This document shows positions 1 to 61,616 of a DNA stretch of 64,000 bases, in pieces. This stretch comes from Macrostomum hystrix. Taxonomy: Eukaryota > Animalia > Platyhelminthes. The notes beneath the pieces are model-generated. The model saw nothing but the letters and a program-made list of their open reading frames with translations. It was not told where the DNA came from and searched no databases. Both the position numbers and the translations under genes were made by a program. Position 1 is the stretch's first letter. Each line of letters opens with the position of its first letter. The DNA lies in assembly GCA_950097015.1 (NCBI GenBank), contig CATNEN010000015.1, positions 1,612,001-1,676,000 on the forward strand. Reading direction: 5' to 3'.

Positions 1-15
1 GTTCTCTAGTGGAAG

Positions 16-3300: not shown

Positions 3301-3347
<47 letters not shown>

Positions 3348-3351
3348 TATT
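2947..3351 (+). mobile_element. tRNA-derived SINE, copy A, with (ATT)n tail
   Basis: A-box-like TGGCAGATCGG, B-box-like GTTCGATTCC, ~350-bp body shared with 6 other loci in the window, long (ATT)n tail at 3301-3351. Confidence 0.9.
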
Positions 3352-3771
3352 TAGTAGAAAAGTTGTTCAAACGTAGAAGCTATGTAATAAATATAATGAT
3401 TTCTCGTTAAACATGAAATAAAAAAACGGTGATAATATTTATTGAGTAATGATCAGTGATACATAGAGCTAAAATTGGTCAAGAATTTAACATCTATATC
3501 TTTACAATAGAAACTGTTAATACAATGATTTCAGTAAACTGGCGACCGACATAAAATTCAAGGTGGCATAAACATAGACTTATATTATCGAGGCTGCGGA
3601 AATCCAATTTGTCATAATCATACACTGTTCTCCGTGAATTGATGTGCACTACATGCATTGTTATACAACTAACTAGCATAGGCTGATGCTTCACAAAGTG
3701 TGCAGTCAGATTTGTTAAATAGTTTATCTAAAACAAGGCGGTGTCTGGGGGGAACTCGCTGTGCTCAGAAC

Positions 3772-14857: not shown

Positions 14858-15284
14858 CATCGAGAAAGCCACAAAACTCACCACCTTAATAAGTCGGCTG
14901 GCCCGGGTGTTTCCATCCGTATGGCAACTATTCCCCAAGCAGTTGTGCTGAGCGTGAGTTGACTTGGCTTTTCTTTCAGGGTGCATGCTTTTGTTAAACA
15001 AAGAACAGTTTGCTTGGCAATGCTGGACCGAAAATGATTTCGTACTGTCAGAGAGTTCCAAGTTGGTCTGTTTTAGCACAGCCTGAAAAACGCAGACTAT
15101 AAAATCTCTCGCCGACCAGTTGGCAGTCCGCGCACCCGCGGACGCTCGCACCTGATTGGCTGGGGCAGGGGGGGTTCTAGTTCAGTGCCGCTATGCAATT
15201 ATAGACAATGGAAACTTTTGGGGCATGAGCCGGCCAGAGAGATTTTAACTTAAGACACGACAGTGAGCCAATTGAAAGTGAAGT

Positions 15285-15575
15285 GATGAGACAAGGGAGA
15301 GATGAGGCAGGGGAGAGATGAGACGGGGGAGAGATGGGGCAAGGGTAGATGAGACAGGGGAGAGATGAGACATTGGAGAGATGAGACGGGAGAAATGAGA
15401 CATGGGAGAGATGAGACAGGGGAAGGATGAGACAGGGTAGAGATGGGACATGGGAGAGATGGGACAGGGGTATATGAGGCAGGGGAGAGATGAGACGGGA
15501 AAGAGATGGGACAGGGGTAGATGAGACAGGGGAGAGATGGGACAGGGGAGAGATGAGACAGGGGAGAGATGAGAT
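15285..15575. repeat. Degenerate purine-rich ~15-bp repeat (GGGAGAGATGAGACA)
   Basis: Repeated GAGATGAGACAGGG cores. Confidence 0.85.
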
Positions 15576-15621
15576 GAAAGTTGGTTCATCGTAAAGGGCA
15601 GAAAATTTCATATCACGAAAA

Positions 15622-16370
15622 TCAGTGTGTGTATGTGGTAGCCCTTATGCGGTATGGGCCAGTCCCGGCACCGGGGAAGAGCGCTTCAATGAACCGGATG
15701 ACGTCGGTTGGACGGGCCCAAAGGTCGCGGATGGTGTAGGACGTCGGCCTCGTCGAGCAGTCGAAGAGGTGGTGAACGGACTTATCCGCCTCACCACAGG
15801 CAGAGCACAGGGCGGAAGAATTATGGTCGAGCTTGTGCCGGTAGCTCGCTAGGAGACGGAAGTGGCCAGACCGGAGCTGCGTGGGTTGGTGCGTTGCCAG
15901 CGATTAAAGGTTTGCTCCAACGGATGGATGGCAGGCGGCGCAGTGCCGAGGAAAGGATTGTGCGAGGAGAGGACGAGGTGACGATGAATGCAGAATGAAA
16001 GTGAGGTGCTCGCGCAGGTCATCAGTCACGAGGCTGATGGGGAGATCGTAGCCGATGCGGCGAAACAGATCGGCAACCAAGGAGCGGAGGTCTTCGCGAA
16101 TGTTGCGAGGCGAAGCCAGCGCCATGAGCAGCAAGTGATTCGGATGTTGAGGAACCAGACTTTCTAGCCAGAATTGACCGGAGAGAAGCTCCTTGACAGG
16201 CAGGACAGAGCATTAGCTGTGAAGGTGTTCAATTTGCGTGCAGCTGTGGCATCCGGTGATGGACCGCAACGCAGCATTTTGGGCACGATACAGGAGGCCC
16301 CAACTCGTGTTGCTTAGGAGCGGTGTCCAGACGGAGGCGCATATATCGTAACTAAGAAAGCTAGTTAATA
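15622..16370 (-). mobile_element. 5'-truncated non-LTR retrotransposon 3' end (I/Nimb/Ingi-like), degenerate
   Basis: Minus-strand frames give SYDICASVWTPLLSNTSWGLLYRAQNAALRSITGCHSCTQIEHLHS (post-RT thumb motif) and, after frameshifts, QLRSGHFRLLASYRHKLDHNSSALCSACGEADKSVHHLFDCSTRP...DLWARPTDVIRFI (C-terminal CCHC domain). Confidence 0.8.
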
Positions 16371-16730
16371 TAAATAATAATTGCAGGAGGGCTGCGGGCA
16401 ATGACACAGCATTTGGTGACACTAGACCCGCAGCCTGCGAGGAGGCAATTCTGCCCATTTCGCTGACTCCCGAGCACACACGCACACGGATACTGTACGC
16501 AGGCACACGCTCACACAGGTGTGTACATCTGCCCTGACTTTCTCATCATCAGGCAGTGTACATTTCACTGTGCCTTGGAGGTTGGCCCTCTAGGGCGTAA
16601 ATTGCACGACAAGCCCCCAAGCCTTCTCTACGCGGCTGCGCCCCAAATGAATGTGGCCTCACTGCGGAATCGAGCTCAGGGACCTTGGTGCGAGAGGCAA
16701 ACGCGTTAAACCACTCTGCCACTCACCCCC
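16371..16730 (-). mobile_element. tRNA-derived SINE, copy D
   Basis: Reverse complement of the full SINE: TGGCAGAGTGG A box, GCTCGATTCC B box, ATTATTATT tail. Confidence 0.9.
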
Positions 16731-16760
16731 GGCTCGCCTTAGTCTGAACACAATTTGCCT

Positions 16761-17421
16761 TCATAGGTAAGAGGAAACACAAGTCGTCATGGCAACTAAC
16801 GCACGCAGCAGCTGGGCCAGTTCGCATTTTCCGCTCTGAACTGCCAAATCAAGCGCGGTCCTACCCTCCCTGTCTTTCAGGCTCCAGTCACAACCAGCCG
16901 ACAGCAGAGTCCGACCAACTGCGGCGGCGGTTGTGGATGGTGCCTCTCTGGCTGCTGACAGAATCGGCGTGGACTCTCCCTTTCCTCTGGCATTGGACGA
17001 GGCTCCGGCTTCCAGTAGAGCGGACAGCGCCGCTGAGTTGCCGCCGATGGCTGCGAAGTAGCTCCCAGTCAGTACATAGTCACACGTGGCATCGGTGAGC
17101 TGCAGCAGGTCTTGCCACAGGGTCGCATTATTGAACTTGCTGTTCTGAGCTGCGTAAATCACAGCCATGAGTCCGTACTTGTCTGGCAGGTTGCAGTTGT
17201 CGCGGGTCACCGCTCGTCGCAGTCCCGCCGTGTCGCCCGCTTTGGCCAGACGAAACAGCTTCTCTCGCTCGTTCTCCTCCTGAAAAGTTGAGCATGTGAC
17301 CTGAGCATTTGAAGCTAAATGGGCTAAACCGTGAGCCACATACCACTGCTGTGAGGCCGCTGATGAAGCCATCTGCATCCACAACCAGACGCATTTCCCT
17401 GGAGAACCAAACTTGAGGCAT
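16761..17421 (-). CDS. Small ankyrin-repeat protein (~198 aa), exons 17421-17344 and 17279-16761
   Basis: ANK motifs DKYGLMAVIYAA, GNSAALSALLEAGASSNARGKGESTPILSAA, KDREGRTALDLAVQSGKCELAQLL. The proposed 64-nt GT-AG intron is in phase 0; the first exon is tentative. Confidence 0.75.
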
Positions 17422-17479
17422 TGCTATTTTTCATTGTCGGTCGTGCAAGGGAATTTCAACAAAAATGTCACAGAAAATG

Positions 17480-17990
17480 TTTGATTACCGTTCGATTTCC
17501 CTGGCAAGTTCTACTCGTAGATAGCCGGCAAGTCGCCAAGTCCATTGCGGTTCGACCCTGCAAACCTGTCAGTTGCAGCAGCTGCAACCGCTTGCTGTTA
17601 TTCTTGCCATTCTACCGCGTCTCCCTCAGCAGGTGCAGCAGGTGCTTGGCGCATCTCCAAGAGCCGTTTCTCGCAGCCTCCATTAGCGGGGTCGCGCCTG
17701 ATGAGTTGCGCAGCCACTACGCATCGAACAGCAGCAGCGCCATCACTCGAAGGTGGTCTTGTCTGGCTGCTACGTGCGCGGCCGCTTTGGGGTTGGCGCC
17801 CAGTTTAAAAAAGTACAAAATGCACTTTTCGGCGCGCACAAATGTGTCACGAACGGCGGCCACCAGCATGAGAGCCGTCTGATCGTTTTGATCAGTTGCG
17901 GTCACGAGTTCGCGCGTTGCAAGCAGCTGCACTTGCTTGAAGTCCGCTTGGACGTACAGCTGTGACAGTTTGCCATATCAGAAGGGGTGG
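17480..17990 (-). pseudogene. Ankyrin-repeat pseudogene, tandem upstream of the intact ankyrin gene
   Basis: DQNDQTALMLVAA...AAHVAARQDHLRVMALLLFDA*WLRNSSGATPLMEAARNGSWRCAKHLL...ETR*...GRTAMDLA: ANK motifs interrupted by two in-frame TAG codons and apparent frameshifts. Confidence 0.65.
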
Positions 17991-18530
17991 CGCCATTATC
18001 GGTTTAATATAATGCACGAAAAAATCGCACACTTTATTTACTACTGAGTTGGAGGTACGAGTAGAATAATGTGCATTTTGTTTTTTAATATAAATTCCTA
18101 AACTGGTCAAATTGTGTAGAACTGTACGATAGAGAAGAATCTAAAATCCAGCTACAATGCATCACTTATAAGCAAACTATAAATTAATCGTAAGGAGCTC
18201 TCAAAATATTCCAAGTGTTTATGCCCCGAAATTAGGAGCTCCCTATCCGACTTTTGTCTGCGAAATCACAATTCATCATGCGAAAAATGACGTACTCTAA
18301 GACCTAGAATTCCCTCCCATGATATGATCTGGCTCAGCAGTAGAAAACGAAGTCCATTTCTCTCAAAGTGTCTCTAGAGTCCACACAGTTCTATCAGGGA
18401 GACATTTTTACTAGAAATATCGGCCAAACTCACTCAAAAAACCTCACTGAAAATGGATTAATGCATATACCTAATGGTACAAGAAAGTAAAGAACTGACA
18501 GAAATATTGGCGTTGTACATAAAAACTATA

Positions 18531-19441
18531 CCTTTTCAACTTCGGATTCGTCAAAAGTGAGTTCGAATTGTTCAGCCTATATAAAACTATAGAGCGCTCA
18601 AGGGAATGAGAAGGGTGTCTATGGTAATTTCTTTCGAGAAAGTGACTTCGAATTCGTCAAAGTAAGTGAAATTCGTCAGTGCAAAAGCAGCCTGATCAGA
18701 AAGTGTCTTCGCTTCGTCTATGGCAAGAAAGCAAAGTGCCCAGTGTAGAGAGGTTTCGTGAGTTTATGATTGAAGTCGGGACCCTTGTTGATGACGAGTT
18801 CACGGTACTTGCTGACAACGCCAGGACACATGGAGTCGTGAATTTTGGGCGTCCTGACCAAAGGCTTCAGTTTCTTCCAACTTTCTCGCCTTTCTTGAAC
18901 GCCACTGAAATGGCATTTTGAACAGGCACTGGAATTTTTTGCATGAAGGCGGCCCTGAAACGGCGCATGACCGACCCTGAAGTTGTCTTTGAAGTGCGTG
19001 ATCGTCAGGCGGCTGTAGCAGCAGGTGAGACACTTCAGAACTGGCGTCTTCGCATTTTGAGTCGAGAAGTGGAAGCTGCGATGGTTGCGATCACGGAGGA
19101 GAAATGCCGACAATGGCACGAATTCACACTTCGGTACGGACCGCGGTGTCTGGCACACGGAGACATCTTGGACTGACTACAGCGTGTTAACCTGTTCAAG
19201 CGACTTTAAAGCGTGATTTGATGCGTCTGTTTTCCTGTTTTGTTTGTTTAGTTGCTGTTTTACTTCACGATTGACAATATATACTGGTTGCACTGACGAA
19301 TTTCACTTACTTTGACGAATTCGAAGTCACTTTCTCGAAAGAAATTACCATAGACACCCTTCTCATTCCCTTGAGCGCTCTATAGTTTTATATAGGCTGA
19401 CGAATTCGAAGTCACTTTTGACGAATCCGAAGTTGAAAATG
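18531..19441 (+). mobile_element. Internally deleted Tc1/IS630-superfamily DNA transposon (911 bp), 154-bp TIRs, TA target duplication
   Basis: TIRs at 18531-18684 and 19288-19441 (~4 mismatches), flanked by TA on both sides. Interior encodes the DDE C-terminal half (VLADNARTH...LQFLPTFSPFLNATEMAF*...ITEEKCRQW) with one stop. Confidence 0.9.
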
Positions 19442-20057
19442 TATATTTGAAACTATAGAAATTGCCCAACTGCTCTGAGTTGACTTTGGCAGCTATTTAA
19501 CGCTGCTCTAAATCAATCGTAATTGGTTGAGCACATTTGTTCATCAAACTGAAATACAAGCTAAATAGGACCAATGCTGCATGCGTTTTTACTTCTTAAC
19601 CACATTAGTAGAGCAGATTGATTGTATTCTTGCTTTATAAGTCTTTTTTTCTCTACCGAATCGAATAGAATAACAAATTCACTGTGTAGCGCTGGTCTAA
19701 GCGAGTGAATAAAATGAATTGTTCGGCAGGTCTCACCCAAAGCCGAGGCCTCTGTGAGCCCCTCAGACACTTAGCCCCGCTGCGTACTCGGCATGTCTAG
19801 CAAGTGCGGCAAGAAACGGCAGCGGCACACAAAAAGAGCGCGTTAATACAATGAGTCTGAACTGAGAAGGACAATGTGCAAACGGGGGGCAGAACTGGTA
19901 GGGTCACGAGATTTCGAAAGAAGAGACTGGGGCAGAGAGCGCACACAAACAGTTCCCATGCCAACAGAGCCCTGAGCCTGTGGTACGACCTGTCTATTTT
20001 AAACACCTGGCCGAAAGCTTCAACTGCACAGAGACTGGACACAGTTTGACAGAGCAC

Positions 20058-21300
20058 ATGACTTCGCGAGATCCTCGCCCGGCTTCGGCCGTCGATGAGG
20101 ATGACGTCATCGAATTCAGCGTGCGCGGCTTCCTGGGCCAGAAGCGGCAGGTGAAGCTGCCGTTGACTTCATTAGTGCAGCACATTTCCCTGCAGGTGCC
20201 GGCCCTCGAGCGAGTGCCCCCGGCTCTGCAGTCGCTGAGGCTAAACGGCTTGCTTTTGGATCCGGGAAAGACGCTAGACGAGTCCGGCCTTCGCCCAGGC
20301 GCGGAGCTTCAGCTGATGCTGCGCGTCACCGAGTGGCAGGAGGTTTTTATCCGGCATCCGCAAGGCGACCGGTGCAGCCTCTTCCTGGAGCCCAGCAACA
20401 CCGTGCTGGACATCAAACAGCTCATCGAGTTCTACGATGGCATTCCAGCTCACGCGCAGACTCTGAAGGCACCGGGGAGTGATCAGCCATTGCGAGACAG
20501 CCTGACTGTAGCGAACCTCGGCCTGCTAGATGGCGACGAGCTGCGGCAAGAGTTGTCAACGCCAGAATATCGCTGCAGTCAGGAGGAGCCGCCACCGCCG
20601 CCGGCGCAGCCGCTGCCAGTGCCAGTGCCAGTGCAGCCACCGCAGAAGCGATCAGACACTCCGGGAAAAAAGCGAAAGACCGGAAATGAAAATTTGGACG
20701 ACGAAACAGCGTCTGACTTTAGCGACGAACATGACTTTGGACTGCCGCTGATGTGGCCGCATGCTCCGCCAGCGAATCGACTCATTAGCATTGGCGGATT
20801 TGGTGTGCATGGCGATGATGAACACGGTGGTGGCGGAGATGGCGGTTCAGGAGGAGGGGACAGGTATCACGAGTTCTATCCGTTGCCCAGAAGTGGCGGA
20901 GGCAGCGCTTCTTCGGAGAGTGGAGATAATGATGGTCCGGGCCACGGAGGTGCTAGTTACATAGTCATTTCAGGTGGCGGTGGCGGCGGTGATAATGGTG
21001 GCGAGGGTGGTGACGGTGATGAAGGCGGCTTACTTCCTGGCAGTAAGGATGGGCCAGCGAGCGATGCTGGAGACGATTCTGGAGGAGATGGCGGTGGTGG
21101 CTTTAACGGTATAAATGACGATGAAGGTGGCGATATTCCTGGAATGGGTGACGATCAGCCCGGAGGAGATGCGGATGATAAACCGGAGGGGGGTGGTGGC
21201 GGTGGTGCCAATGGTGGCGGCGAAAATGACGATCCTTTGGCTCCAAAAGCGGCTAGTGACGACCCTAAGCCGGAGGACGAACCTCAACAAGATGATGACC

Positions 21301-21351
<51 letters not shown>

Positions 21352-24300
21352 GAGGCAGAGTCGCTGAAGGTAGTGAGCATTCAGAGGAGCCGCAGCCAGA
21401 AGGACCAGAAGAACCGAGAGATAAAATAAATGAAGGTGGTGGTGGAGAGGGCGGAGGCGGAGGCGATGGTGGAGTTTCTCCTTTTAATCCTGCCGCCCCG
21501 GCTCGGAGCGATGACGGCGGCGGTGGCGTTGAAGACGGCGGAGGAGGCGCAGCAGATGTCGGTCCCCCAGGACCGCAGAGCAGTGGTGGCGGTGCTGGTG
21601 GTGGCGGCAATAGAGGCGATGGTACCGGTGGTAGTAATCAAAATGGTGGCGGCGGAGGTGGCCAAGCAGGCCAGGTGACATCAGGTGACCAAACTGGGGA
21701 CGGTGATGCAGCTGAAGGAGCGAGCGGTGGAACTGGAGGTGGAGGAAGTGCCACAGCGCAGGATCCTACAGGAACTGGCGGAGGCGGAAGTGGAGGCGGA
21801 AGTGGAGGCGGCGCTAGTGTTGATCCAGCAGCACCGCAGCCAGACATCAGGAGTCCGGATGGAGGTGGAGGAGGTGGTGGTGGTGGACTGGCCGGAGTCG
21901 CAGGAGCCGCAGCTGCTGGTGGGCTTGCGGGCGCTGGCGGCGCTACTGCCATTGCCGTAGCTGGAGGCAGCGGAGGGCAGCAGACGCAACAGCAGCAGCA
22001 GGAACGCGATGAACGGCGCTCCAGAGATCGACGAGGATCGGATCACAGCCACCGAAGCCGGCGCAGCCGACATAGCCGTAGTTCCAGCCGCAGCCACCAT
22101 GGTCACCACAGACACCATAGCCACAGCAGCTACAGCTCACACAGCCACAGCGGTCACGGAGGACACGGCGGACATGGTGGACACGGAGGACACGGCAAAA
22201 AGCACAAGAAACACGGAATTTTGAGGAAACTTTTACCAGCAGCACTCGGCGGCCTGGCTGGAGCGGGAGCAATGTATGTGGGCAGCAAGCTGCTCGGCAA
22301 GAAGAAGGAAACTGGAGCAGCGATTCAGGCAGTTCCGGCACCTGTTCAGATTGTAACGCAGCAGCAGCAGCAGGGTGGAGGTGGGACCGGTGGCAGCGGT
22401 GGAGACGGCGGAGATGCAGGAGGAGGCGCAAAGGCTGGCAAGCTGGCTAAATTTGTGCCCAAAGTTGTGCAGCGCGGCAAGAAAGGTGTCGGTGGTCTGG
22501 CCGGAGTTCTCGCAGGTGCCGCTGGTGGTGCCGGCGCCGGAATCGGTGGTAAGATGTTGTGGGACGCATACAGGCGCAGGCGAGGCGGCAAGGCAGACGG
22601 CGCGGCTGCTGCCGCGTCAACAGAGCCACGAAAGGAGACGGAGCACCGGCAAGGAGGCAAAGAGCTTGACGACAACGAGGCGCCCGCATCTTCGCCGATC
22701 GATGAGGACGAGGTGAAACCAAGGCCAGGCGGACTGAGGACTGAGTCGGAGAAAGAGGGAGAGTCAGATCATGGCGGCAAAGTGGTGGCTGGTGTGGCTG
22801 CAGGAGGCGCTGCCATTGGTGTGGCAGCAGCGGCAGCGGCAGTTGCTCCGCGCCCGGCCAAGCGGACGAAAGCTGCTGGCGCGGACATCGCATCAAAAAC
22901 TGATCAAGAAGCGAAGCAAGTCGGCCAGGAGCTCCCTGATGAGGCACCGATTCCATCGGGAAGGAAACTTGTCCCGCAGCATCCGGTGCCAGCTCCACGC
23001 GGACCTAGCCCCACCCCCAGGCTGCGTAGGCATCGGGCTGAAGAACCGAACAAAGAAGCAACAGCCGAGGTTGACCAGCAGCAGGGCGGAAAGGAGAAAG
23101 AAACTGGGTCCGACAATGATACTAGGCTTCCGCCTGCTGCATTACCGAGGAGTCGAGCTGCTGCAGCCACAGACGTCAAGGGCAACAGTGGAAAAGATAT
23201 CAGCGGTGGTCCTCTAGTGCCAGTAACAATTTTCATTCCGTCCGACCCACACAGACGAGGCAAAGGGCCTTTACGCCCACCAACGTACCGCAGCAAACTC
23301 GGTGAAACCGAATCTCATCTAGAAGCTACGGCACCTCCCGACTCGGAAGGCGAAGCTAGCGATGCAAAGAAGAAACCGGAACTTCTCCAGTTGGACTCCT
23401 CAGAGGATGGCGATGCGCAGCACCGAAGAGGATTTTTGCCGCTCGACGATGACGATTCGGAAGGCGGTGGTGAGGGTGGCGGCAGTAGCGTAATCAACCT
23501 AAAGAGAAAGCCACACGTTAGCCGACAAGAAAGCCCTGGATCGAGGACGAGCAGATACAGTTCCGATTCAAGCCTCTCGAGCGGCTCAGGTTACCGAAGT
23601 TCCCGACAACGAAAATATCAGGACCGATGGAGAAGATGGAAAAAGTTTTTCGAACTTGTTCCTCCAACGCTATTGTACGGTGGCCGCACGAAAATTCAGC
23701 GGCGAGAGAAGAAACAATACGTGCACCGACACGCGGGCAAGCGGTTCACGCCCGCTCTCAGACTGGGGCCACATTACGGCGGCAGACGACGGAGCAAAGC
23801 AACAAAAGCAGCTGAACGACCTGCATCCGCTGCTGTGACTGTTGAAACTGGCGAAACAGACGACATTAGAGAACAGCAGAAGGAGCCACCGCGAAGCCTT
23901 CATGACAAATCTACCGATCCTGAACCAGTGAAGGAAGAAGACTCTCTTCAGCGCCACAAGGAGGCAGTAGTTACTCCAGCCGTTACCCCACCACGCCGAC
24001 CAGAACCTTCGCCATCGGTTGAGCCCTCGGCGAATGCTCTGCCAGCTTCACCGGCCAAGAGCTATATAACATCGGGAATTACGGCTCGTTCAGAAGATCG
24101 CGAGGCTGAGAAGCCGGTGGAATTCTTTTGCGATGTCTGTGGCATGCTTGGGCCGAGGCATTCTCATCCGGCTCGAGCCAGAGCGTCATCAAGAGAGGAA
24201 CCATCAACTGTGCCGAAAACTACAGATGGGGACACTTTCACGGACCGAGTCGTGAAGTCGCTTCCTCTGCCAGTTCCGCACAAAATCCTGGGCAGAGACA

Positions 24301-27300
24301 TGAAAGGGCAGCGGAGTGATGCGTTTGCCAGAACTTCTGACGTGCCCACCAACTACAGTCGGCATGGCTCTGTGCGGACTCACCTTCCAGTGAACGAAGT
24401 GGGTACCGAGACGGAGCCCAAACCTGGCGCAGAGAAGGGGCAGTCCGAGAAGGCTGAATCCCGAGATGTTCAGCCCGTAGCGAGTGGTTTCATTTCAGTG
24501 CCTTCTAAGGCTGAAGCTTCAACATCAACGGATGATTCGGTCAAGGAGAACGACACACTGAACAAAATAAAACAGCTGCCGAAGCCACCGTCGCGCAGTG
24601 ACAGCATGCGCTCACTGGTTGACGAAAAGTCCACGGCAGCTGACAAGAAGACCTGGCGCAAGGTGACCGATCCGGACGATCTGCTTGCCGGAGGCTGGAC
24701 TGCCCCTCTTCCGCCAGCGTCAACCAGCGACAGCAGCGCAGAGGCAGACGTTTCCGAACAGAAGCGAGCTGCTAGCTTGAAACAGATATCCGATGCTCAT
24801 GTGTGCATCGAGGAATCGCCAGATAGCGACATGCGCAGCAGACAAAGATCTCTGACCACGGCGACGTCGCAGACGGAGCCTCGGCAAACTAGCTCAGACC
24901 GCTGCACACAGACAAAATCTGAAGATGTTTCCGACTCGCAGTGGCTGAAGGGCGGGGACGGAAGAGATTCCCGAGATGAAAGGCACACGTTTCCTTATTC
25001 GAAAATTTACGATCGACCAGCGAGCTTACAGACAGCATCTGACATTTTGGATAGCGAGGTGGAGACACAGGAACTACCACTGCATCTCAAGTACTTCGAG
25101 GCGCCGGAAAGTTCGGATGAACCTGCGCAACAGAAACTAGGGCAGCCGCTGAAGATCCGTGAAAACCGATTGTCAGGCATTTTGGCACGAAATAGACTCA
25201 CGTCTTCAGAGTTGGACGAGGAGCTTGACGCTATCGAGGACGCTGTGGCAGAAGCTGCTCTTGAAAGCGAACTGATGGCTGAAATGCAAAGTCTGAGAAA
25301 TCTGCGATCGGATCTGAGGAGGAACACTAAATCACCCGAGCTGGACAATAGTTCACAATGGGTGCTGGCTGCAGATGAGCTCGACCTGCAAACTCCATCG
25401 GATCAGTACAGCGAGCATGAGCTGCTCGTCGACTTTGACGAGACGGAGGTGATAGATCCATATTTTCCAGCAACAGCCGGAACTGCCAGGGGTCGAGTTA
25501 GCAGCGCTCCGGTGTCGAGGCGGAGCCGAAGTCTTCTGCGCGACAGAGACCCGCCTTGGCCTAGCGAAGTTGAGCGACTCGAAAAATTCCTGGTAGCTGG
25601 CAGGCGCCCGAACTCGGCAAGCAGATTTCAGAGAAAGACTCCGCCAGATGACTCAGACAGTCAGAGCTTGGTGTCCGAGCCCCTCACGCCACCGAGACAA
25701 ACGAAGCAAGCGGCATCAAGTCTCGGCAGGCAGTTTCTGACAGATGATCTGGAACAGGCGGGATCTTCAAGGTTCAGTCGCATCGCGCTACCGGAAGGAC
25801 ACTCGACAAGTACAATACTGAGGCTGGCGGGACTCCTTTCGAATCGCGCCGAAGACTCTGATTCCGCTGCCAGTACACTGTCCAGTGTCCGCTCCATGGG
25901 TCCCCATAGGCCCGAGCGGATCACTGTCAACAGGCCGCCGGTATTGCCCAGCTTTCCAGCGGTGCCAAAGTCGTTGAAGCAGCCAATCATCACAGACCGC
26001 GAGCTCAGCGAGTGGTCCAACCGAGTCACTGGAAAGTCAGCTGACGTCAACTATGAGAAAGGCAAGCCTGCTGCAACTAAAGCAATCGTGTCGGAGGGAA
26101 CCATCTGGGACCTGGAACGTCTGGCAAGGCAAGCAAAGTCAGAACTAATTAGTTCGACGGAGCGAGCGAAAGCCATGCTTAGAGCGGTGACACCGCGAGC
26201 GAAGGGTGAACAGCGAAGCCACTTAAATGGTCACAAAGCGACCCAGACAGCGCATAAAACCACAAGATCGCAGGCAACGAAAACAGACGAGCAGCCAGCA
26301 TCCGGTGCTGCACCTCAGCCGAAATCCGATAGCACGTCTCAATTTGGGGATGACTCTAGGCCGGCTAGCACCAACAGCGTTCTTGGTGAACAACAGCAGC
26401 AGCAGCGAGTTCGCATCACCATTGATGTCAGTCGACTACGCGCCAAGCCATTATCTGCAACATTGGACGTTGATACGCGCGTAGAGCAGCTGCTGGCCAA
26501 GGTCGGGCGAGCCACCGGGCTGGATGAGCAGTGTCTGCGACTGAAGCACGGCAGCCGGCAGCTGAACCGCGGCCGGACATTGCGGCACTACGATCTAGGC
26601 GAGGCGTGCGTTCTGCGCCTGTGTGCGGATCAGCTAGTCAAATGTACCGTGCTGCAGAGGAACAACTTCCTGCCCGTGACAATGCCACGCCACGCGACGG
26701 TGCTGTCGCTTCGAACTAAACTGCAACGCAGCGGCAGCAGCGGCAAAGAAAAGCCTGTAAATTTTGATCAGCTACGCATTTCAATGGGCGACCGCTTGCT
26801 AGACGACAGCCGAGAATTGGCGCAGCTCGGACTGAGCAAAGATGACGTTCTGCAAGTTCTAGGGCCGAATCACTTTCCACTGCGAGTGCGCTCTACTGAC
26901 AGGACCTATGATCTGTTCGCAGAGCCGAACCTACTCGTGGGGACTCTGAAGGCCCTCATACATCGGCTAGGCGGCCCGAGGCCCTATGACCAAACCGTGA
27001 CTATGCGAGACCGAGTTCTCTACGATCGCTACAGTCTAGCGGACTACTCAGTGACTTCAACGACCAGCCTGGAGGTCGTCGGCACGGACCAGCCTGTCGT
27101 ACAGGTTGCTCTCCGGCCAGACTGCGACATCATTGTGCGGCTGCGACAAGGACTTACAGTGCGAGATGCGGCCGTGATGGCAAAGCGATTGGCTGGTCAA
27201 ATGGCCGATAAAGACATATCGATCTCCGACGCTAACGCAGCTGATGACGAAATTCCACGGTTGGCTTGGCTTCCACCGGCCCAGGACTCTGGCGATGCCG

Positions 27301-27665
27301 CATCCACGCCTGTGGTTCTCGAGCCGGAGACTTCCTTGCACAGCCTCAACCTTGGACTGAGCGGTGACGGTGGCAGCTTGCGACGGTTGCACGTGTTGCC
27401 CAATACGGCGGTGGATACAGAGTCAACAGTTTGCGTCTTCGTCCGAGACACGAACGGAGCCGTCAGGTTGTACACAGGCTGGCCGGCAGCGCTCAGCCTG
27501 GCCGACTTTCGCGACCATCTGGCAGCCCGACTGGGCACCAGCGGCGCCGGATTTAAGCTTCGTCCATCAGCATCGTCGGCAGCTGAACCTTCGACAGCTT
27601 TGGCCAGTCTCGCTGACGCTGGCGGCTTCGTGGTATTGCAGATGATGCCCGGCTTGACTCGCTGA
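20058..27665 (+). CDS. Giant intronless protein (~2535 aa from first ATG): 2 N-terminal and ~5 C-terminal ubiquitin-like domains around a Gly/His/Ser/Pro-rich low-complexity core
   Basis: Frame open from 19902 to 27665. UBL-like segments include LQSLRLNGLLLDPGKTLDESGLRPGAELQL, VFIRHPQGDRCSLFLEPSNTVLDIKQLIEFYDGIPAHAQTL, LRLKHGSRQLNRGRTLRHYDL, LRISMGDRLLDDSRELAQLGL and QTVTMRDRVLYDRYSLADYSVTSTTSLEV. The last two UBLs are weaker calls. Confidence 0.8.
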
Positions 27666-28495
27666 GTCGGCAGAGAACTACTGAGGTAGCTGAGGTGCCT
27701 CTGAATTTGTGCTTTGGAGCATCAAAAATGTAGAGCTTACCTGACAAACCTTAGAAATTGATAAATTTTCAGGTTTTATCTTAATGATAGTGTGGCCAAA
27801 GCGCGCGGTAAATGATTTAAAGTTTTTTTATACTAGTAGAAACACGTTTTCCTTCGATTTATTAATTTACAAGTAAATATTTCTATTTTTTCAACACTTA
27901 TTTTGTAAAAGTACACTCCTAAGATCGACTTTCTGTTACACTGAAATGTACTTTTAAGTGAACTTTTAACATGTCAAGTAAATATATTCTAGAGCGTTCG
28001 TAAATTGAGTTTAAACGGACCATAAGCGCTAAGGCGCAAACTGTCAAACAAATCAGGCCTTTGCATAAATCTGCAACAACAGAAAAAACTGTCCATACAC
28101 GCGCATTTGAATTCTAGTAATTCGCAGCTAGCTGACATTCTAACGAATCTTTTACAAGATTTTGTATTTCTCGGCTACAACAGATAATAATAAGGTTAAA
28201 AAGTAAAAAAGCAACAACAAAAATAGCAAGACTTGAGACCAGGGACTAGGAGCACTGAGTAGGGTGATTAGTGACTGCTCAATCAATCTCACCTGATGTC
28301 AGAGGTTAAAATAATCTGCAACTGAAAAAGTGAAAAATAAACAAAAATGCAGTCCTAGCAAAACAACATCACAATGCGTTAGTTGATGCGATTTCAACTT
28401 TTCAGTCTCGCTAAAGCAGAAGCTGACAAAAAAGCGAAGCTGTATCACACTACTAAAAGTAGGCAAAAATAGTGAAAAATATTGATCTCAGTAAT

Positions 28496-30133
28496 GCTCA
28501 GGTGTCATATCTATCTATATCTGTTTAACTGCTCAGGTGTCTTATCTATCTATATCTGTTTAACTGCTCAGGTGTCATATCTATCTATATCTGTTTAACT
28601 GCTCAGGTGTCTTATCTATCTATATCTGTTTAACTCGCTCAGGTGTCATATCTATCTATATCTGTTTAACTCGCTCAGGTGTCATATCTATCTATATCTG
28701 TTTAACTGCTCAGGTGTCATATCTATCTATATCTGTTTAACTCGCTCAGGTGTCATATCTATCTATATCTGTTTAACTCGCTCAGGTGTCATATCTATCT
28801 ATATCTGTTTAACTGCTCAGGTGTCATATCTATCTATATCTGTTTAACTCGCTCAGGTGTCATATCTATCTATATCTGTTTAATTCGCTCAGGTGTCATA
28901 TCTATCTATATCTGTTTAACTGCTCAGGTGTCATATCTATCTATATCTGTTTAACTGCTCAGGTGTCATATCTATCTATATCTGTTTAACTGCTCAGGTG
29001 TCATATCTATCTATATCTGTTTAATTCGCTCAGGTGTCATATCTATCTATATCTGTTTAATTCGCTCAGGTGTCATATCTATCTATATCTGTTTAATTCG
29101 CTCAGGTGTCATATCTATCTATATCTGTTTAATTCGCTCAGGTGTCATATCTATCTATATCTGTTTAACTCGCTCAGGTGTCATATCTATCTATATCTGT
29201 TTAACTGCTCAGGTGTCATATCTATCTATATCTGTTTAACTGCTCAGGTGTCATATCTATCTATATCTGTTTAATTCGCTCAGGTGTCATATCTATCTAT
29301 ATCTGTTTAATTCGCTCAGGTGTCATATCTATCTATATCTGTTTAATTCGCTCAGGTGTCATATCTATCTATATCTGTTTAATTCGCTCAGGTGTCATAT
29401 CTATCTATATCTGTTTAACTCGCTCAGGTGTCATATCTATCTATATCTGTTTAACTCGCTCAGGTGTCATATCTATCTATATCTGTTTAATTCGCTCAGG
29501 TGTCATATCTATCTATATCTGTTTAACTCGCTCAGGTGTCATATCTATCTATATCTGTTTAACTGCTCAGGTGTCTTATCTATCTATATCTGTTTAACTG
29601 CTCAGGTGTCATATCTATCTATATCTGTTTAACTGCTCAGGTGTCTTATCTATCTATATCTGTTTAACTCGCTCAGGTGTCATATCTATCTATATCTGTT
29701 TAACTCGCTCAGGTGTCATATCTATCTATATCTGTTTAACTGCTCAGGTGTCATATCTATCTATATCTGTTTAACTCGCTCAGGTGTCATATCTATCTAT
29801 ATCTGTTTAACTCGCTCAGGTGTCATATCTATCTATATCTGTTTAACTGCTCCGGTGTCATATCTATCTATATCTGTTTAACTCGCTCAGGTGTCATATC
29901 TATCTATATCTGTTTAACTGCTCAGGTGTCATATATATCTATATCTGTTTAATTCGCTCAGGTGTCATATCTATCTATATCTGTTTAACTGCTCAGGTGT
30001 CATATATATCTATATCTGTTTAACTGCTCAGGTGTCATATCTATCTATATCTGTTTAACTCGCTCAGGTGTCATATCTATCTATATCTGTTTAACTCGCT
30101 CAGGTGTCATATCTATCTATATCTGTTTAACTG
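28496..30133. repeat. 35/36-bp minisatellite (GCTCAGGTGTCATATCTATCTATATCTGTTTAACT[C]), ~46 copies
   Basis: Regular units; lies between the convergent 3' ends of the UBL gene and the FRMD4-like gene. Confidence 0.97.
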
Positions 30134-30268
30134 CGAGGCAGATTGCAAAAAAGAGGAAAAATTGAGGGTAAACTGTGAGCTCAAAAATGGAGATTGCTCA
30201 GCGCAGACTAAGCATATTAAGTCCGAGTGTAAAACCACTGGCTAGAGGGCGGAAGCTTTGGTGTCAGA

Positions 30269-33200
30269 CTACAAAAATGTACTTTTATCGGCGTCTTCGT
30301 TCTCGTCGAAGCAGCAGTCGTTGTCATCGCCGTGACCGTGGCCGATGGGACTGCCGACTTCGCCATCGGATGCCAGGAGGCCTCGGCGCCAGAGCTTTCG
30401 CTGCTGCTCTTCGCTAGACATCTGCAGCGCCTGCGGGGTAGTCAGCGGCTGCGGCGTCTGCGGAAGCGGCGAGAGCGGCTCCTGGAAGTGGCAGCCCGGC
30501 GGACGGATTGAGCGAGACGTCGAGCCGCTCTTTTTTAAGTACCGGCGCTGGCGCGGCTGCTGCTGGGTCGGAGACGGCGACAGGAACTCCGCGCTGCCGC
30601 TGTGGTCGCTGGAGGTGTCGTCGTTACTTCCGTATCTGCCCGATTTCATCAATAGTTCACGTCAGAGAACTCAAAGGTTTTTTGGCACTAAAATTAATAA
30701 ATCCATATAGTTTGACAGCGTTATATTTTTGGGATCAGAATAGGTGTTCCATCTAGGTGGACAGTGTTCTATTTTTAGCATCAGAAGGGTTTTCAATCTA
30801 GGCGGAGTGTTATATTTTTAGCATCAGAAGGGGTGTTCAATCTAGGCGGACAGTGTTCTATTTTTAGCATCAGAAGGGTGTTCAATCTAGGCGGACAGTG
30901 TTCTATTTTTAGCATCAGAATAGGTGTTCCATCTAGGCGGACAGTGTTCTATTTTTAGCATCAGAAGGGTGTTCAATCTAGGCGGACAGTGTTCTATTTT
31001 TAGCATCAGAATAGGTGTTCCATCTAGGCGGACAGTGTTCTATTTTTAGCACCTGAAAAGGTGTTCCATCTAGGCGGACAGTGTTCTATTTTTAGCACCA
31101 GAATAGGTGTTCAATCTAGGCGGACAGTGTTATATCTTTTAGAAGAATGGAACAAGTAGGTCAGCACAATATCCAGAGTCATAAATCAATATTTTAAGTA
31201 AAAACGTTAAAGGTTAGGAACTAAATAAATTTACTTCATTTAAACCACTCAAATTTCTTTCTTTCTTGCTCAGCCATCCTCAAAAGAATGCTTCCAATTG
31301 ATAAGAAGCAGTAGGTCCTCGTTTGCGTGACTTAAACGCAAAGTTTTTAAAGTAATTAATCCAAAAAGCAGGTAAAAATTAACTAGTAAATGCTAGGAAG
31401 AGAAATAACAACAGTCAAAGTGCATGGCCACATGTTTATAATGCAAACGTGCAAAACTGTGGTCGTTACGGCAAATTTGGCAATGCCAAACAACAGCAAA
31501 ATAGTATATGGTGCAAGGCAGTTAATATTGTGTTTGTATTTCCAATTTCACAGCTTTAGCTGTTTCTAAAACTTTGGAATGAAAATATGAAAATAGTTAT
31601 GATTTCATTGCCGAGCGAAAAAAATCGAGGCTTTATAAAAAGTCAATCTCTCCGCTAAATTGAAATTGAAAGATTTCAAATAAAAATATCACACTTAGCT
31701 GCATGAAATACTACTGATAAGGTGAGGCAAGTAGTCTGTTAAGTACGCGGAACAAAACTGCGCATGCATTCGCTTGACTCTGCTATTTAGTCTATGGTCC
31801 AAAGAGGTCCCGGAAACTATCAGCTACTCATCGTTTGTAAATAGTAAGAGCTGGAAAATATAAAAAGTGCATGCACGAAGCTAGCAACACTAAAAGTGCA
31901 TAGTGCTACCAGACATACAGTTAGTAAAGTGAGATGAGATGAGAAGTTAGGCAGGCTAGGATAAGTAATTAAGCACAACATCACCAAGGTTCTAGCAGGG
32001 ATTAGAGCTATTTTAATCTAGTGCATAATATATTTTATCTATTTAATTCACAACTTCGGCTTTTCTAATGTACTTTCAAAGATAAATGCAGCGCGAAGAT
32101 TGATTTCAAAAAATTGACTAGATTTTCTTGAACTTTATAAAAGTTCACATGGGTCGATTCCTGCTTGGTAAAAAATATTTTTTTTAATTATTATATTGAG
32201 TAATATCTAACTGATTGTACTGGATGGGATCTCAGAAATCCTAAACCCAGATTCTACTGGATGGGATCTCAGAAATCCTAAACCCAGATTCTACTGGATG
32301 GGATCTCAGAAATCCTAAACCCAGATTCTACTGGATGGGATCTCAGAATCTCAGAAATCCCAAACCCAGATTCTACTGGATGGGATCTCAGAAATCCTAA
32401 ACCCAGATTCCACTGGATGGGATCTCAGAAATCCTAACGATCTAACAATGGGATCTGAAAATACCACGCCATCCTATTGTAACAAACCAAAGGGAAATTA
32501 TGACGTTTCTAGGAAATACAACAACTCATAAGCGAGCAACGCTTAAATAAATCACGTAAACTTCTGAAATCCTAAAACGGAGCCTCCTCAGCTTACGCAT
32601 CGAATCTGTTGACAACAGGCAACGAAGCTGCTGCTGCTGCGGCGGCGGCGGCGGCGGCGGCGGCAGACACCGCGGGGAAGCTGGTGTTGACAGGCAGCGG
32701 TAGATTAGTGCGAAACAAATGATTGACAGGCCGCTGCGAAATCGCGGCCAAACTGTCAGCCGATTCTTCGGATCCGCAGCCAACTGTCAGCAGGTCGCCC
32801 AGACTGTTGGACCGGCGACCCAGCGACCCAGACTTGGCGGCCAGGCTGCCACCGCGACGCAGCGCCACAACAGACGAGGAAGCGTCCGTGGCATCAGCGA
32901 CGCCAGCGCGCGAGCCCCCCCAGTCCGGGACTTCCACGGCGTCGGACGCGGAGGCGGCCGGAGGTCGAGCGCGGAAACCGCTGGAGTTTTTGAAACAATA
33001 GGACGGTAAGATGATTCACGAACTGGAAGGCGCCGACACAGCCACCCGTAGTGGCTGATGCTGGTACCCATTTCACAGCTGAAGCATTATAAGTGCTGCT
33101 TAAAGGACAAAAATTAAATTCCCCCATGGGCTGAGATTCGAACTCCTGACGGCATATACCTGACAAAGGCCAAGCCAGCGCTGAGAGATTGTGATGAGGA

Positions 33201-53995: not shown

Positions 53996-53999
53996 GAGT

Positions 54000-61615: not shown

Positions 61616-61616
61616 G

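What the first reader, a model, noticed from the sequence alone, without database searches (positions are those of the whole stretch)
20058..27665. Giant single-exon protein with ubiquitin-like domains bracketing a ~2000-aa disordered core
Seen: a 7.6-kb uninterrupted ORF with no large minisatellite, in a region where other long genes are intron-rich. Two tandem UBL-like folds lie at the N-terminus and about 4-5 at the C-terminus; none ends in a di-Gly, so they look integral rather than conjugatable. I recognise no characterised family with this 2+5 UBL architecture. Established: integral UBLs recruit proteasome, p97 or E3 machinery (Rad23, BAG6, midnolin). Inference: a multivalent scaffold or condensate protein coupled to proteostasis, possibly lineage-specific.
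Basis: partly seen in the sequence, partly recalled or inferred. Interest (0 to 1): 0.75.

Follow-up and report, generated by a model that had tools for sequence, protein, structure and literature searches.

The report
Flatworm giant protein capped by ubiquitin-like arrays
This is a real, expressed, intron-free flatworm (Macrostomum) gene for a 2,535-residue protein: strings of ubiquitin-like domains that cannot be cut off sit at both ends of a roughly 1,950-residue low-complexity middle, natural selection keeps it intact, it was found only in this genus, and its job is unknown and probably not the usual link to the protein-degrading machinery.

Summary
An ORF at 20058-27665 (+) encodes 2,535 aa with no internal stop; the other five frames carry 51-141 stops.

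- **Transcription:** contigs of three runs (very probably RNA) start about 20 nt before the ATG and show no splice joint up to 25399. Upstream flank 19400-19800 is uncovered.
- **Domains:** Pfam finds five ubiquitin-family domains, two N-terminal and three C-terminal. They lie head-to-tail, in register with linear polyubiquitin. A sixth (C5) is a beta-grasp by a moderate-confidence model. A seventh (C4) is only plausible.
- **Surface and tail:** none ends in Gly-Gly. All five replace ubiquitin's Ile44 with R/K/K/S/T.
- **Relatives:** the only ortholog found is a fragmentary Macrostomum lignano "hypothetical protein". Against it omega is about 0.17, synonymous sites are saturated, and the linker holds strictly conserved short motifs.
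- **Source:** the genome matches M. hystrix.

Verdict: a genus-restricted, non-conjugatable multi-UBL scaffold, probably descended from polyubiquitin-like repeats. The proposed proteasome/p97 coupling is unsupported and weakened by the lost Ile44 patch. This is a new architecture of a known kind and of moderate interest.

The parts
20038..27936 (+). Approximate extent of the unspliced transcript (5' UTR about 20 nt, 3' UTR about 170-270 nt)
   Evidence: Contigs of runs X2 and X4 begin at 20040 and 20038, and nothing covers 19400-19800. No joints are reported. The only gaps are at low-complexity stretches 21285-21364, 21856-21891 and about 22478-22530. A 5,431-nt contig starts at 22506, so it should end near 27936; the X3 and X4 contigs should end near 27836-27839.
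19995..20003 (+). TATTTTAAA, a TATA-like element about 35-43 nt upstream of the contig starts
   Evidence: Read from the sequence. Its role as a promoter element is inferred only.
20058..27665 (+). Coding sequence, 2,535 codons plus stop, single exon
   Evidence: The first ATG of the transcript is at 20058.
20100..20333 (+). UBL N1 (aa 15-92)
   Evidence: Pfam PF00240, 30.9 bits, E 2.3e-7. With N2 it aligns in register to linear di-ubiquitin, E about 2e-12. It ends ...LMLRVTE, with no GG.
20334..20567 (+). UBL N2 (aa 93-170), abutting N1 without a linker
   Evidence: Pfam PF00240, 31.6 bits, E 1.4e-7.
20778..21857 (+). Acidic glycine-rich block (aa 241-600; 30-47% Gly per 60-residue block, net charge about -50)
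   Evidence: Composition and charge profile. Small tandem repeats lie within it.
21990..22223 (+). Basic Arg/Ser/His-rich block with (HGG)n and KKHKKH (about aa 645-722)
   Evidence: Translation. Block 661-720 has 19 His, 16 Ser and net charge +10.
21879..21962 (+). Gly/Ala-rich hydrophobic segment 1 (aa 608-635)
   Evidence: Kyte-Doolittle 1.21. An approximate insertion-energy sum is positive, so this is a weak transmembrane candidate.
22230..22286 (+). Gly/Ala-rich hydrophobic segment 2 (aa 725-743), flanked by Lys-rich runs
22485..22544 (+). Gly/Ala-rich hydrophobic segment 3 (aa 810-829), flanked by K/R runs
22773..22838 (+). Gly/Ala-rich hydrophobic segment 4 (aa 906-927), the most hydrophobic of the four
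24111..24191 (+). Strictly conserved motif FFCDVCGMLGPRHSHPARAR (C-x2-C-x6-H-x-H), a possible small metal-binding knuckle (aa 1352-1378)
   Evidence: 20 consecutive residues, FFCDVCGMLGPRHSHPARAR, are identical between the window and M. lignano. Metal binding is inferred only.
24645..24698 (+). Conserved island KKTWRKVTDPDDLLAGGW (aa 1530-1547)
25326..25541 (+). Cluster of conserved islands (TKSPEL.NSS.W; TPSDQYSE.EL; RGRV.SAP.SRRSRSL; aa 1757-1828)
25818..26006 (+). Cluster of conserved islands (AGLLSNR.ED; ERITV.RPPVLPS; SLKQ.IITD.EL; aa 1921-1983)
26094..26186 (+). Longest conserved island, GTIWDLE.LARQAKSELISSTERAKAML (aa 2013-2043), probably helical, about 75 aa before C1
   Evidence: 27 of 31 residues are identical. 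The helix is inferred from the sequence only.
26403..26633 (+). UBL C1 (aa 2116-2192), the best conserved domain
   Evidence: Pfam PF00240, 25.5 bits. It is 82% identical to M. lignano, omega 0.09. C1-C3 align in register to tri-ubiquitin, E 5.5e-9.
26634..26873 (+). UBL C2 (aa 2193-2272)
   Evidence: Pfam PF00240, 23.1 bits, E 6.3e-5, just under the 25.4-bit cut-off when scanned alone. It is 73% identical, omega 0.05.
26874..27092 (+). UBL C3 (aa 2273-2345)
   Evidence: Pfam PF00240, 24.8 bits, E 1.8e-5. It is 71% identical, omega 0.16.
27093..27425 (+). C4 (aa 2346-2456): a possible seventh UBL with a ~35-aa insertion after the helix; unverified
   Evidence: There is no Pfam hit and hhalign probability is below 1%. 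The AF2 model shows a beta-beta-alpha...beta...beta order but pLDDT is only 30-52. Foldseek aligns two-domain ISG15 over 174-187 columns. The atlas gives a weak lead, 0.86, to two-UBL clusters.
27426..27662 (+). C5 (aa 2457-2535): terminal beta-grasp domain, ending ...VLQMMPGLTR with no GG
   Evidence: It is not detectable by sequence. In the AF2 model the 10-residue block means are 58-84 across C5 and the order is beta-beta-alpha-beta-(short helix)-beta. Foldseek matches ubiquitin, SUMO, ISG15 and the BAG6 UBL at TM 0.72-0.80 and about 2.5 A. In VIA-align all 50 top rows are ubiquitin-fold, Z 6.8-8.1. The tail is conserved in M. lignano (...VLQMLPGLPR*).

Best explanation
This is a functional, intron-less, single-copy gene of the flatworm Macrostomum (the genome matches M. 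hystrix). It encodes a 2,535-aa intracellular scaffold. Two arrays of integral, non-conjugatable ubiquitin-like domains cap a ~1,945-aa low-complexity linker: 2 at the N-terminus and, at the C-terminus, 3 shown by sequence, 1 by fold and 1 possible. The units lie head-to-tail without linkers, at the ~76-80-aa period of linear polyubiquitin, and each is closer to ubiquitin than to its sister units. The arrays therefore most likely descend from polyubiquitin-like repeats that lost the Gly-Gly cleavage and conjugation site and then diverged. Because all five have also lost the Ile44 surface, I infer that they act as non-canonical protein-binding 'beads'. On this reading they give the protein multivalency at both ends, while the linker supplies conserved short motifs and alternating acidic and basic blocks for further partners or self-association. 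Shown: the ORF, the lack of any splice joint across the part laid (20038-25399), coverage by contigs that are very probably transcripts, the domains, the lack of GG and Ile44, purifying selection, and restriction to Macrostomum in the databases searched. Inferred: the polyubiquitin origin, the scaffold role, the partners and the cellular location.
For: The ORF is real and far beyond chance. Contigs of three runs start at 20038-20040 and show no joints up to 25399. The upstream flank is uncovered. These contig sets are about 47 Mb, against a 220-Mb genome. Pfam ubiquitin scores E 1.4e-28 with five stretches, and each domain scores 23-32 bits alone. The arrays align in register to linear di- and tri-ubiquitin. 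C5 is a beta-grasp by model and by two structure searches. There is no GG, and Ile44 is replaced by R/K/K/S/T. Each UBL is closer to ubiquitin (z 5.4-12) than to its sisters (z -2 to 5.6). The gene is single-copy in its own genome. The M. lignano ortholog covers aa 1334-2535 with pN 0.26 against a saturated pS of 0.69. Omega is about 0.17 overall, 0.05-0.17 in the UBLs and 0.15-0.25 in the linker. Third-codon-position identity is 43% against 71-76% at positions 1 and 2. The linker holds eleven conserved islands and has a blocky charge pattern. No other domain is present.
Against: No partner, location or phenotype is known, so the scaffold role is a default reading of the architecture. The runs are not labelled as RNA, so transcription rests on the coverage pattern and contig-set size. 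Only one ortholog was found, and it is fragmentary with about six frame changes near homopolymers; it could be a recently decayed copy rather than a product of assembly error. The N-terminal 1,333 aa have no ortholog sequence, so the conservation of N1-N2, the Gly-rich block and the hydrophobic segments is untested. C4 is unverified. The structure models are shallow (1-3 sequences).
Confidence: 0.5

Rival explanations
1. One reading: a proteostasis adaptor. The integral UBLs dock the protein or its cargo on the proteasome (Rpn1/Rpn10/Rpn13), p97 or an E3, as in Rad23, Dsk2/ubiquilin, BAG6 or midnolin.
For: The domains belong to the ubiquitin family. The fold matches for C5 include the UBLs of BAG6, Rad23, midnolin, NUB1 and Dsk2. 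From established knowledge, most characterised integral UBLs act in this way.
Against: Ile44 is replaced by a charged or polar residue in all five sequence-supported UBLs, and Leu8/Val70 are mostly lost. This is the surface those receptors read. No UBA, UIM, BAG, UBX or catch domain is present. The fold matches are generic to all beta-grasp domains.
Confidence: 0.18
2. A membrane-anchored multi-UBL protein. The four Gly/Ala-rich hydrophobic segments (aa 608-927), each flanked by Lys/Arg runs, would be glycine-zipper transmembrane helices. An even number would leave both UBL arrays in the cytosol, as in HERPUD1 or TMUB1.
For: There are four segments of 19-28 residues with Kyte-Doolittle means of 1.2-1.45, basic flanks and GxxxG-like spacing.
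Against: The hydropathy is below the usual threshold of about 1.6. An approximate insertion-energy sum is positive for all four, +2.2 to +5.4 (the scale values were recalled from memory, so this is rough). There is no signal peptide. Their conservation could not be tested, because the ortholog contig starts at aa 1334. Gly/Ala runs are also common in soluble low-complexity proteins.
Confidence: 0.12
3. A genetically encoded, uncleavable mimic of linear (Met1-type) polyubiquitin. The head-to-tail arrays would engage or decoy readers, erasers or writers of linear chains.
For: The arrays have a linker-less, in-register head-to-tail arrangement like linear di-, tri- and tetra-ubiquitin. They have no cleavable GG. 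An earlier, unchecked note of this scan reports an array of at least seven HOIP-like genes in this genome.
Against: Linear-chain readers use the Ile44 and Phe4 patches and the Ub tail, and these are not kept. Identity to ubiquitin is only 18-27%. I did not verify the HOIP note.
Confidence: 0.07
4. Not a functional protein-coding gene: a chance or decaying ORF, or a secreted glycine/histidine-rich structural material.
For: The composition is very low in complexity. The M. lignano copy has frame changes. The protein is absent from the databases apart from one fragment.
Against: The frame is open for 2,535 codons, against a maximum of 442 in shuffles. Omega is about 0.17 with saturated synonymous sites. 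Contigs consistent with transcripts cover it. There is no N-terminal signal peptide, and UBLs are cytosolic or nuclear domains. The frame changes sit at homopolymers in a long-read assembly.
Confidence: 0.04

Closest known systems
Polyubiquitin precursors (UBB/UBC type) and linear Met1-linked ubiquitin chains
   Same: Both have ubiquitin-family units placed head-to-tail without linkers at a ~76-aa period. N1-N2 and C1-C3 align in register with di- and tri-ubiquitin. Each unit is closer to ubiquitin than to its sister units.
   Different: The units here are 18-27% identical to ubiquitin and differ from one another. None ends in RLRGG, so they cannot be released or conjugated. Ile44 is lost in all. 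The arrays are the ends of a 2,535-aa protein rather than a precursor.
ISG15, FAT10 and the C-terminal tandem UBLs of OASL
   Same: All have two abutting ubiquitin-like domains. ISG15 and OASL are among the best sequence and structure matches. OASL's pair is likewise integral and not conjugated (from established knowledge).
   Different: ISG15 and FAT10 end in GG and are conjugated. OASL carries an OAS domain. None has arrays at both ends or a ~1,950-aa linker.
BAG6 (large proline-rich protein) and Rad23/Dsk2-type UBL adaptors
   Same: These also have an N-terminal integral UBL followed by long low-complexity sequence. The BAG6 UBL (4dwf) is a top structural match for C5.
   Different: They have a single UBL with an intact Ile44 patch, plus BAG or UBA domains. 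None of these features is found here.
USP7/USP47 C-terminal HUBL array (five UBLs)
   Same: Both have a C-terminal array of about five integral beta-grasp domains.
   Different: There is no USP catalytic or TRAF domain here. Here three of the units still match the ubiquitin family model PF00240.
Rad60/Esc2/NFATC2IP (RENi) proteins
   Same: Both have a long disordered N-terminal part followed by C-terminal tandem ubiquitin/SUMO-like domains that lack GG.
   Different: The Rad60-SLD Pfam scores are 12-17 bits, against a cut-off of 23.8. RENi proteins have two SLDs and no N-terminal UBL pair.
Macrostomum lignano hypothetical protein BOX15_Mlig032073g5 (P0001; UniRef 'Ubiquitin-like domain-containing protein')
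   Same: It is the ortholog: 54% identical over aa 1651-2222. The contig continues in other frames to the same C-terminal tail.
   Different: It is annotated only as a 724-aa fragment that runs into a wrong frame. It has no paper or described function.

Membership tests
Ubiquitin family domain (Pfam PF00240) proteins, i.e. integral-UBL proteins | At least one domain scoring above the Pfam gathering threshold (25.4 bits) | tested here: met
   The whole protein scores 98.9 bits. N1 scores 30.9, N2 31.6 and C1 25.5 bits alone. C2 (23.1) and C3 (24.8) fall just under the threshold alone.
Ubiquitin family domain (Pfam PF00240) proteins, i.e. integral-UBL proteins | Beta-grasp fold | tested here: inconclusive
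   This is met for C5 in a moderate-confidence model. The single-sequence model of C1-C5 failed, with pLDDT 34. N1-N2 were not modelled.
Conjugatable ubiquitin-like modifiers (ubiquitin, NEDD8, SUMO, ISG15, FAT10) and polyubiquitin precursors | C-terminal Gly-Gly (or Gly) exposed or released by a protease at the end of the domain | tested here: not met
   The domain ends read RVTE, STPE, CADQ, GPNH, GTDQ...DTES and PGLTR*.
Conjugatable ubiquitin-like modifiers (ubiquitin, NEDD8, SUMO, ISG15, FAT10) and polyubiquitin precursors | Near-identical ubiquitin repeats | tested here: not met
   Identity to ubiquitin is 18-27%, and the units differ from one another.
UBL-UBA proteasome shuttle factors (Rad23, Dsk2/ubiquilin, Ddi1) | UBA domain(s) besides the UBL | tested here: not met
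   No UBA or any other domain appears in Pfam at E up to 1.
UBL-UBA proteasome shuttle factors (Rad23, Dsk2/ubiquilin, Ddi1) | Hydrophobic Leu8-Ile44-Val70 surface on the UBL | tested here: not met
   The Ile44 position holds R, K, K, S and T. The Leu8 position holds F, P, L, gap and gap. The Val70 position holds M, E, C, L and V (this depends on a MAFFT alignment).
BAG6/Scythe | C-terminal BAG-like domain and TRC35/UBL4A-binding region | tested here: not met
   There is no BAG domain and no relative of the linker.
USP7-type HUBL proteins | USP catalytic domain preceding the UBL array | tested here: not met
   There is no UCH/USP domain.
Rad60/Esc2/NFATC2IP (RENi) | Two C-terminal SUMO-like domains matching Rad60-SLD | tested here: not met
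   PF11976 scores 12-17 bits, against a cut-off of 23.8.
Membrane-anchored UBL proteins (HERPUD1, TMUB1/2) | Bona fide transmembrane helices | tested here: inconclusive
   There are four weakly hydrophobic Gly/Ala segments. The rough insertion-energy sums are positive. No dedicated predictor was available.

The most novel reading that the evidence does not exclude
The two arrays are fossilised, uncleavable linear-polyubiquitin modules that a flatworm lineage has re-purposed as 'stickers' at both ends of a ~1,950-aa blocky polyampholyte spacer. That would be a genetically encoded analogue of a protein carrying linear ubiquitin chains at both termini. It would nucleate a lineage-specific condensate, or engage or decoy linear-chain machinery, in a genome that an earlier unchecked note says has expanded HOIP-like ligases.
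Probability: 0.07. Interest if true: 0.75.

Novelty: new variant of a known kind. Interest (0 to 1): 0.36.

Why it matters
Integral ubiquitin-like domains are usually single and usually read by the proteasome, p97 or E3 ligases through the Ile44 surface. This protein differs on three counts: it has six or seven such domains in two polyubiquitin-like arrays, it has lost both the cleavage site and that surface, and selection still maintains it across the two Macrostomum species compared. It would be a natural example of polyubiquitin repeats recycled into a structural or multivalent binding module. It also adds to the several unusual ubiquitin-related genes already noted in this genome. In practice, the public M. 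lignano model of the gene is a frame-shifted 724-aa fragment, whereas the M. hystrix locus gives the full-length protein. The significance is limited because no function, partner or expression site is known and the family appears confined to one genus.

Tried and rejected
- **Homolog searches that came back blank.** These used the full-length protein scored on the C-terminal region and the N-terminal 300 aa scored on aa 1-175. The C-terminal 435 aa found only P0001. The length limits of that tool mean that longer or shorter kin may have been missed.
- **Exhaustive HMMER with the C-terminal 485 aa.** Apart from P0001, every inspected hit was a polyubiquitin or a giant near-canonical ubiquitin array, and listed best stretches mostly ended at C3, none beyond query position 343 (early C4). 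I rejected these as orthologs.
- **Single-sequence AlphaFold2 of C1-C5.** It failed with pLDDT 34. This also shows that a poor model of C4 is uninformative.
- **hhalign of C4 and C5 against a profile of the five UBLs.** It gave no support, with probability below 1%. MAFFT also misaligned C5.
- **Searches on the conserved linker.** The atlas search (best score 0.79) and the PDB sequence search found nothing.
- **Other negative searches.** Rfam on 15000-32000 gave no hits. The literature held no paper with Mlig032073 or with Macrostomum plus 'ubiquitin-like domain', and the supplements of PMC7336406 held nothing.
- **Ideas considered and dropped.** I checked the conserved helix at aa 2013-2043 by eye for a UIM or MIU motif, and the spacing does not fit. 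A secreted adhesive or structural protein is unlikely because there is no signal peptide and UBLs are intracellular. I sent no complex-prediction job, because I claim no specific binding pair.

Full report
**1. The observation**

The window holds an open frame from 19980 to 27665 on the plus strand. Its first ATG is at 20058 and it encodes 2,535 residues. The frame has no internal stop. The other five frames of the same stretch carry 51-141 stops, and the longest open frame in 200 shuffles of the stretch was 442 codons. Tandem Repeats Finder reports only four arrays of 32-56 bp, so the length does not come from a minisatellite.

The region is GC-rich, at 54-61% against 35-45% in the flanks. 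GC is highest at first codon positions, reflecting the many Gly, Ala, Asp and Glu codons.

**2. Source genome**

The assembly has 220,453,370 bases in 42 contigs. Wiberg et al. 2023 (PMC10468722) describe the Macrostomum hystrix assembly as about 220 Mb in 42 contigs. Earlier notes of this scan also call the genome Macrostomum, and the only ortholog found is from M. lignano. I therefore take the window to be M. hystrix. This is an inference from matching assembly statistics.

**3. Transcription and gene structure**

Four runs of one 2020 study hold 90-94% of the sampled words of 19700-27900. Their contig sets are only 47-50 Mb, a quarter of the genome. I laid three of them on 19400-25399.

- Their contigs begin at 20038, 20040 and 20086.
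- They leave 19400-19800 uncovered.
- They show no joint and no indel.
- They break only at low-complexity stretches: 21285-21364, 21856-21891 and about 22478-22530.

Contigs of 5,306-5,431 nt that start at 22506-22531 must end near 27836-27936, which is 170-270 nt past the stop.

The runs are not labelled as RNA. Even so, the pattern is what an unspliced 7.9-kb mRNA would give: sharp starts about 20 nt before the ATG, a silent upstream flank and small contig sets. A TATTTTAAA element lies 35-43 nt upstream of these starts.

A fifth run, from another sample, holds short pieces with five differences. Three are synonymous, one is E-to-D and one is G-to-E.

**4. Domains**

Pfam finds the ubiquitin family (PF00240) at E 1.4e-28 with five stretches, and no other domain at E up to 1 apart from weak ubiquitin-clan echoes. 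Scanned one by one:

| Domain | Residues | Pfam PF00240 score |
|---|---|---|
| N1 | 15-92 | 30.9 bits |
| N2 | 93-170 | 31.6 bits |
| C1 | 2116-2192 | 25.5 bits |
| C2 | 2193-2272 | 23.1 bits |
| C3 | 2273-2345 | 24.8 bits |
| C4 | 2346-2456 | no hit |
| C5 | 2457-2535 | no hit |

Against the PDB, N1-N2 align in register with linear di-ubiquitin (E about 2e-12). C1-C3 align in register with tri-ubiquitin (E 5.5e-9; 220 residues on 220). The units therefore abut without linkers at the period of a polyubiquitin.

Profile-profile comparison gives no support for C4 or C5. A single-sequence AlphaFold2 model of C1-C5 failed, with pLDDT 34.

A second model of C4-C5, using the M. lignano rows, reached 10-residue block means of 58-84 over C5, with the order beta-beta-alpha-beta-(short helix)-beta. 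Foldseek then returned only ubiquitin-fold proteins. Single domains superpose at TM 0.72-0.80 and about 2.5 A. In an independent all-against-all aligner, all 50 top rows for residues 105-190 were ubiquitin, SUMO, UBX or UBL domains, at Z 6.8-8.1, 2.0-2.9 A and 72-85 aligned residues. Z near 8 is not decisive alone, but the uniformity of the list is.

C4 keeps a beta-beta-alpha...beta...beta order with a ~35-residue insertion, but pLDDT is only 30-52. Two-domain ISG15 aligns over 174-187 columns, and the language-model atlas gives a sub-threshold lead (0.86) to two-UBL clusters.

The count is therefore five UBLs by sequence, a sixth by fold and a seventh possible.

**5. What kind of UBLs**

None ends in Gly-Gly. 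The junctions read ...LRVTE|WQE...LCADQ|LVK...LGPNH|FPL and ...VGTDQ|PVV, and the protein ends ...QMMPGLTR. They cannot be released or conjugated in the way ubiquitin, ISG15 or FAT10 are.

In the alignment to ubiquitin, Ile44 is R, K, K, S and T in the five domains. Leu8 is kept only as F or L in two of them. Val70 is M, E, C, L and V, and the chain-forming lysines are mostly gone. From established knowledge, the Leu8-Ile44-Val70 surface is what UIM, UBA, Rpn1/10/13 and many E3 sites read on ubiquitin and on Rad23/Dsk2-type UBLs. Its absence argues against the canonical docking mode, though not against other modes.

Each of the five is much closer to ubiquitin (shuffle z 5.4-12) than to its sister domains (z -2 to 5.6). 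Together with the linker-less register, this is what independent decay of polyubiquitin-like repeats would give. That origin is an inference.

**6. The core**

Residues 171-2115 have no family, solved relative or atlas neighbour. Several features stand out.

- Residues 241-600 are 30-47% Gly with a net charge of about -50.
- Residues ~645-722 are an Arg/Ser/His-rich basic block with (HGG)n and KKHKKH.
- Further acidic and basic blocks alternate up to residue 1860.
- Four Gly/Ala-rich hydrophobic segments (aa 608-635, 725-743, 810-829, 906-927) are flanked by Lys/Arg runs. Their hydropathy is marginal, at 1.2-1.45. A rough insertion-energy sum is positive, and I used scale values recalled from memory. 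I therefore treat them as weak transmembrane candidates.

**7. Relatives and selection**

The gene is single-copy in its genome. The only other matches are polyubiquitin genes at 24-32% identity.

Word-index searches and an exhaustive HMMER search of 1.84 billion representatives found one relative, a 724-aa M. lignano 'hypothetical protein BOX15_Mlig032073g5'. Every other inspected hit was a polyubiquitin or a giant array of 10-20 near-canonical ubiquitins.

The M. lignano contig (12,945 bp, GCA_002269645.1) starts inside the gene. It covers residues 1334-2535 in seven collinear pieces with about six frame changes, several at or next to short homopolymers (T5, C5, A4T3). It ends with the same tail and stop. 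Because protein similarity persists in every piece, I read these changes as long-read assembly indels. A very recent pseudogene copy cannot be excluded.

Over 1,085 aligned codons, pS is 0.69 (saturated) and pN is 0.26, giving omega of about 0.17. Third-position identity is 43%, against 71-76% at positions 1 and 2. Omega is unreliable in absolute terms at this saturation.

| Region | Omega | Amino-acid identity |
|---|---|---|
| C1 | 0.09 | 82% |
| C2 | 0.05 | 73% |
| C3 | 0.16 | 71% |
| C4 | not computable (pS saturated) | 60% |
| C5 | 0.17 | 58% |
| Linker | 0.15-0.25 | 55% |

The linker holds eleven islands with at least 10 of 12 residues identical. Among them are FFCDVCGMLGPRHSHPARAR (C-x2-C-x6-H-x-H, possibly a small metal site) and GTIWDLE.LARQAKSELISSTERAKAML. 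The 'disordered' linker is thus partly a string of conserved short motifs. The N-terminal 1,333 residues could not be compared.

**8. Surroundings**

Upstream on the minus strand lie an ankyrin-repeat exon (16761-17384) and a homeobox exon (3772-4425). Downstream lie a 19-bp minisatellite of about 210 copies (44286-48240), a gag/protease ORF and a LINE ORF. Rfam finds nothing in 15000-32000. Nothing nearby bears on function.

**9. Mechanism and rivals**

My best reading (confidence about 0.5) is a non-conjugatable multi-UBL scaffold. Two polyubiquitin-derived bead arrays with non-canonical surfaces give multivalent binding at both ends. The linker contributes conserved motifs and blocky charges.

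- A membrane-anchored form (about 0.12) depends on the weak Gly/Ala segments.
- A linear-polyubiquitin mimic (about 0.07) is the most interesting reading not excluded.
- A non-functional ORF or secreted material (about 0.04) is contradicted by selection, coverage and the lack of a signal peptide.

**10. Novelty**

The domain class is well known, and UniRef already labels the M. lignano fragment 'Ubiquitin-like domain-containing protein'. No paper mentions the gene. The full-length architecture matches no family I tested: polyubiquitin, ISG15/FAT10/OASL, Rad23/Dsk2, BAG6, USP7 HUBL, RENi or HERPUD/TMUB. I rate it a new variant of a known kind, of moderate interest.

Noticed in passing
window 44286-48240: A 19-bp minisatellite (ACACACACAATGGAACCAG) of about 210 copies at 92% match. 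It gives a strong AT skew (0.65-0.70) and spurious long ORFs in all three plus-strand frames. A second array of 21/44/65-bp units lies at 48733-49080.
   Followed up: partly
window 24111-24191 (aa 1352-1378): FFCDVCGMLGPRHSHPARAR is identical in M. hystrix and M. lignano inside an otherwise 55%-identical linker. Its C-x2-C-x6-H-x-H spacing suggests a small zinc-binding knuckle that matches no Pfam family.
   Followed up: partly
L016 (M. lignano NIVC01005265.1) 1-3551: The public M. lignano gene model BOX15_Mlig032073g5 (724 aa) is a fragment that runs into a wrong frame after about residue 588. The contig carries about six frame changes, several at or next to short homopolymers, and starts inside the gene, so the public annotation understates the protein.
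   Followed up: yes
window 53199-54068 (-) and 61597-63696 (+): Retroelement ORFs: a gag-like zinc knuckle with an aspartyl protease, and a LINE ORF with an endonuclease (Exo_endo_phos) and reverse transcriptase.
   Followed up: no
window 3772-4425 (-) and 16761-17384 (-): A homeodomain-encoding exon (PF00046, E 6e-19) and an ankyrin-repeat exon. They are probably parts of two spliced minus-strand genes upstream of the finding.
   Followed up: no
window 21879-22838 (aa 608-927): Four Gly/Ala-rich hydrophobic segments with GxxxG-like spacing and Lys/Arg flanks. They resemble glycine-zipper helices or the prion-protein AGAAAAGA core. Whether they are membrane or amyloid-like segments is open.
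   Followed up: partly
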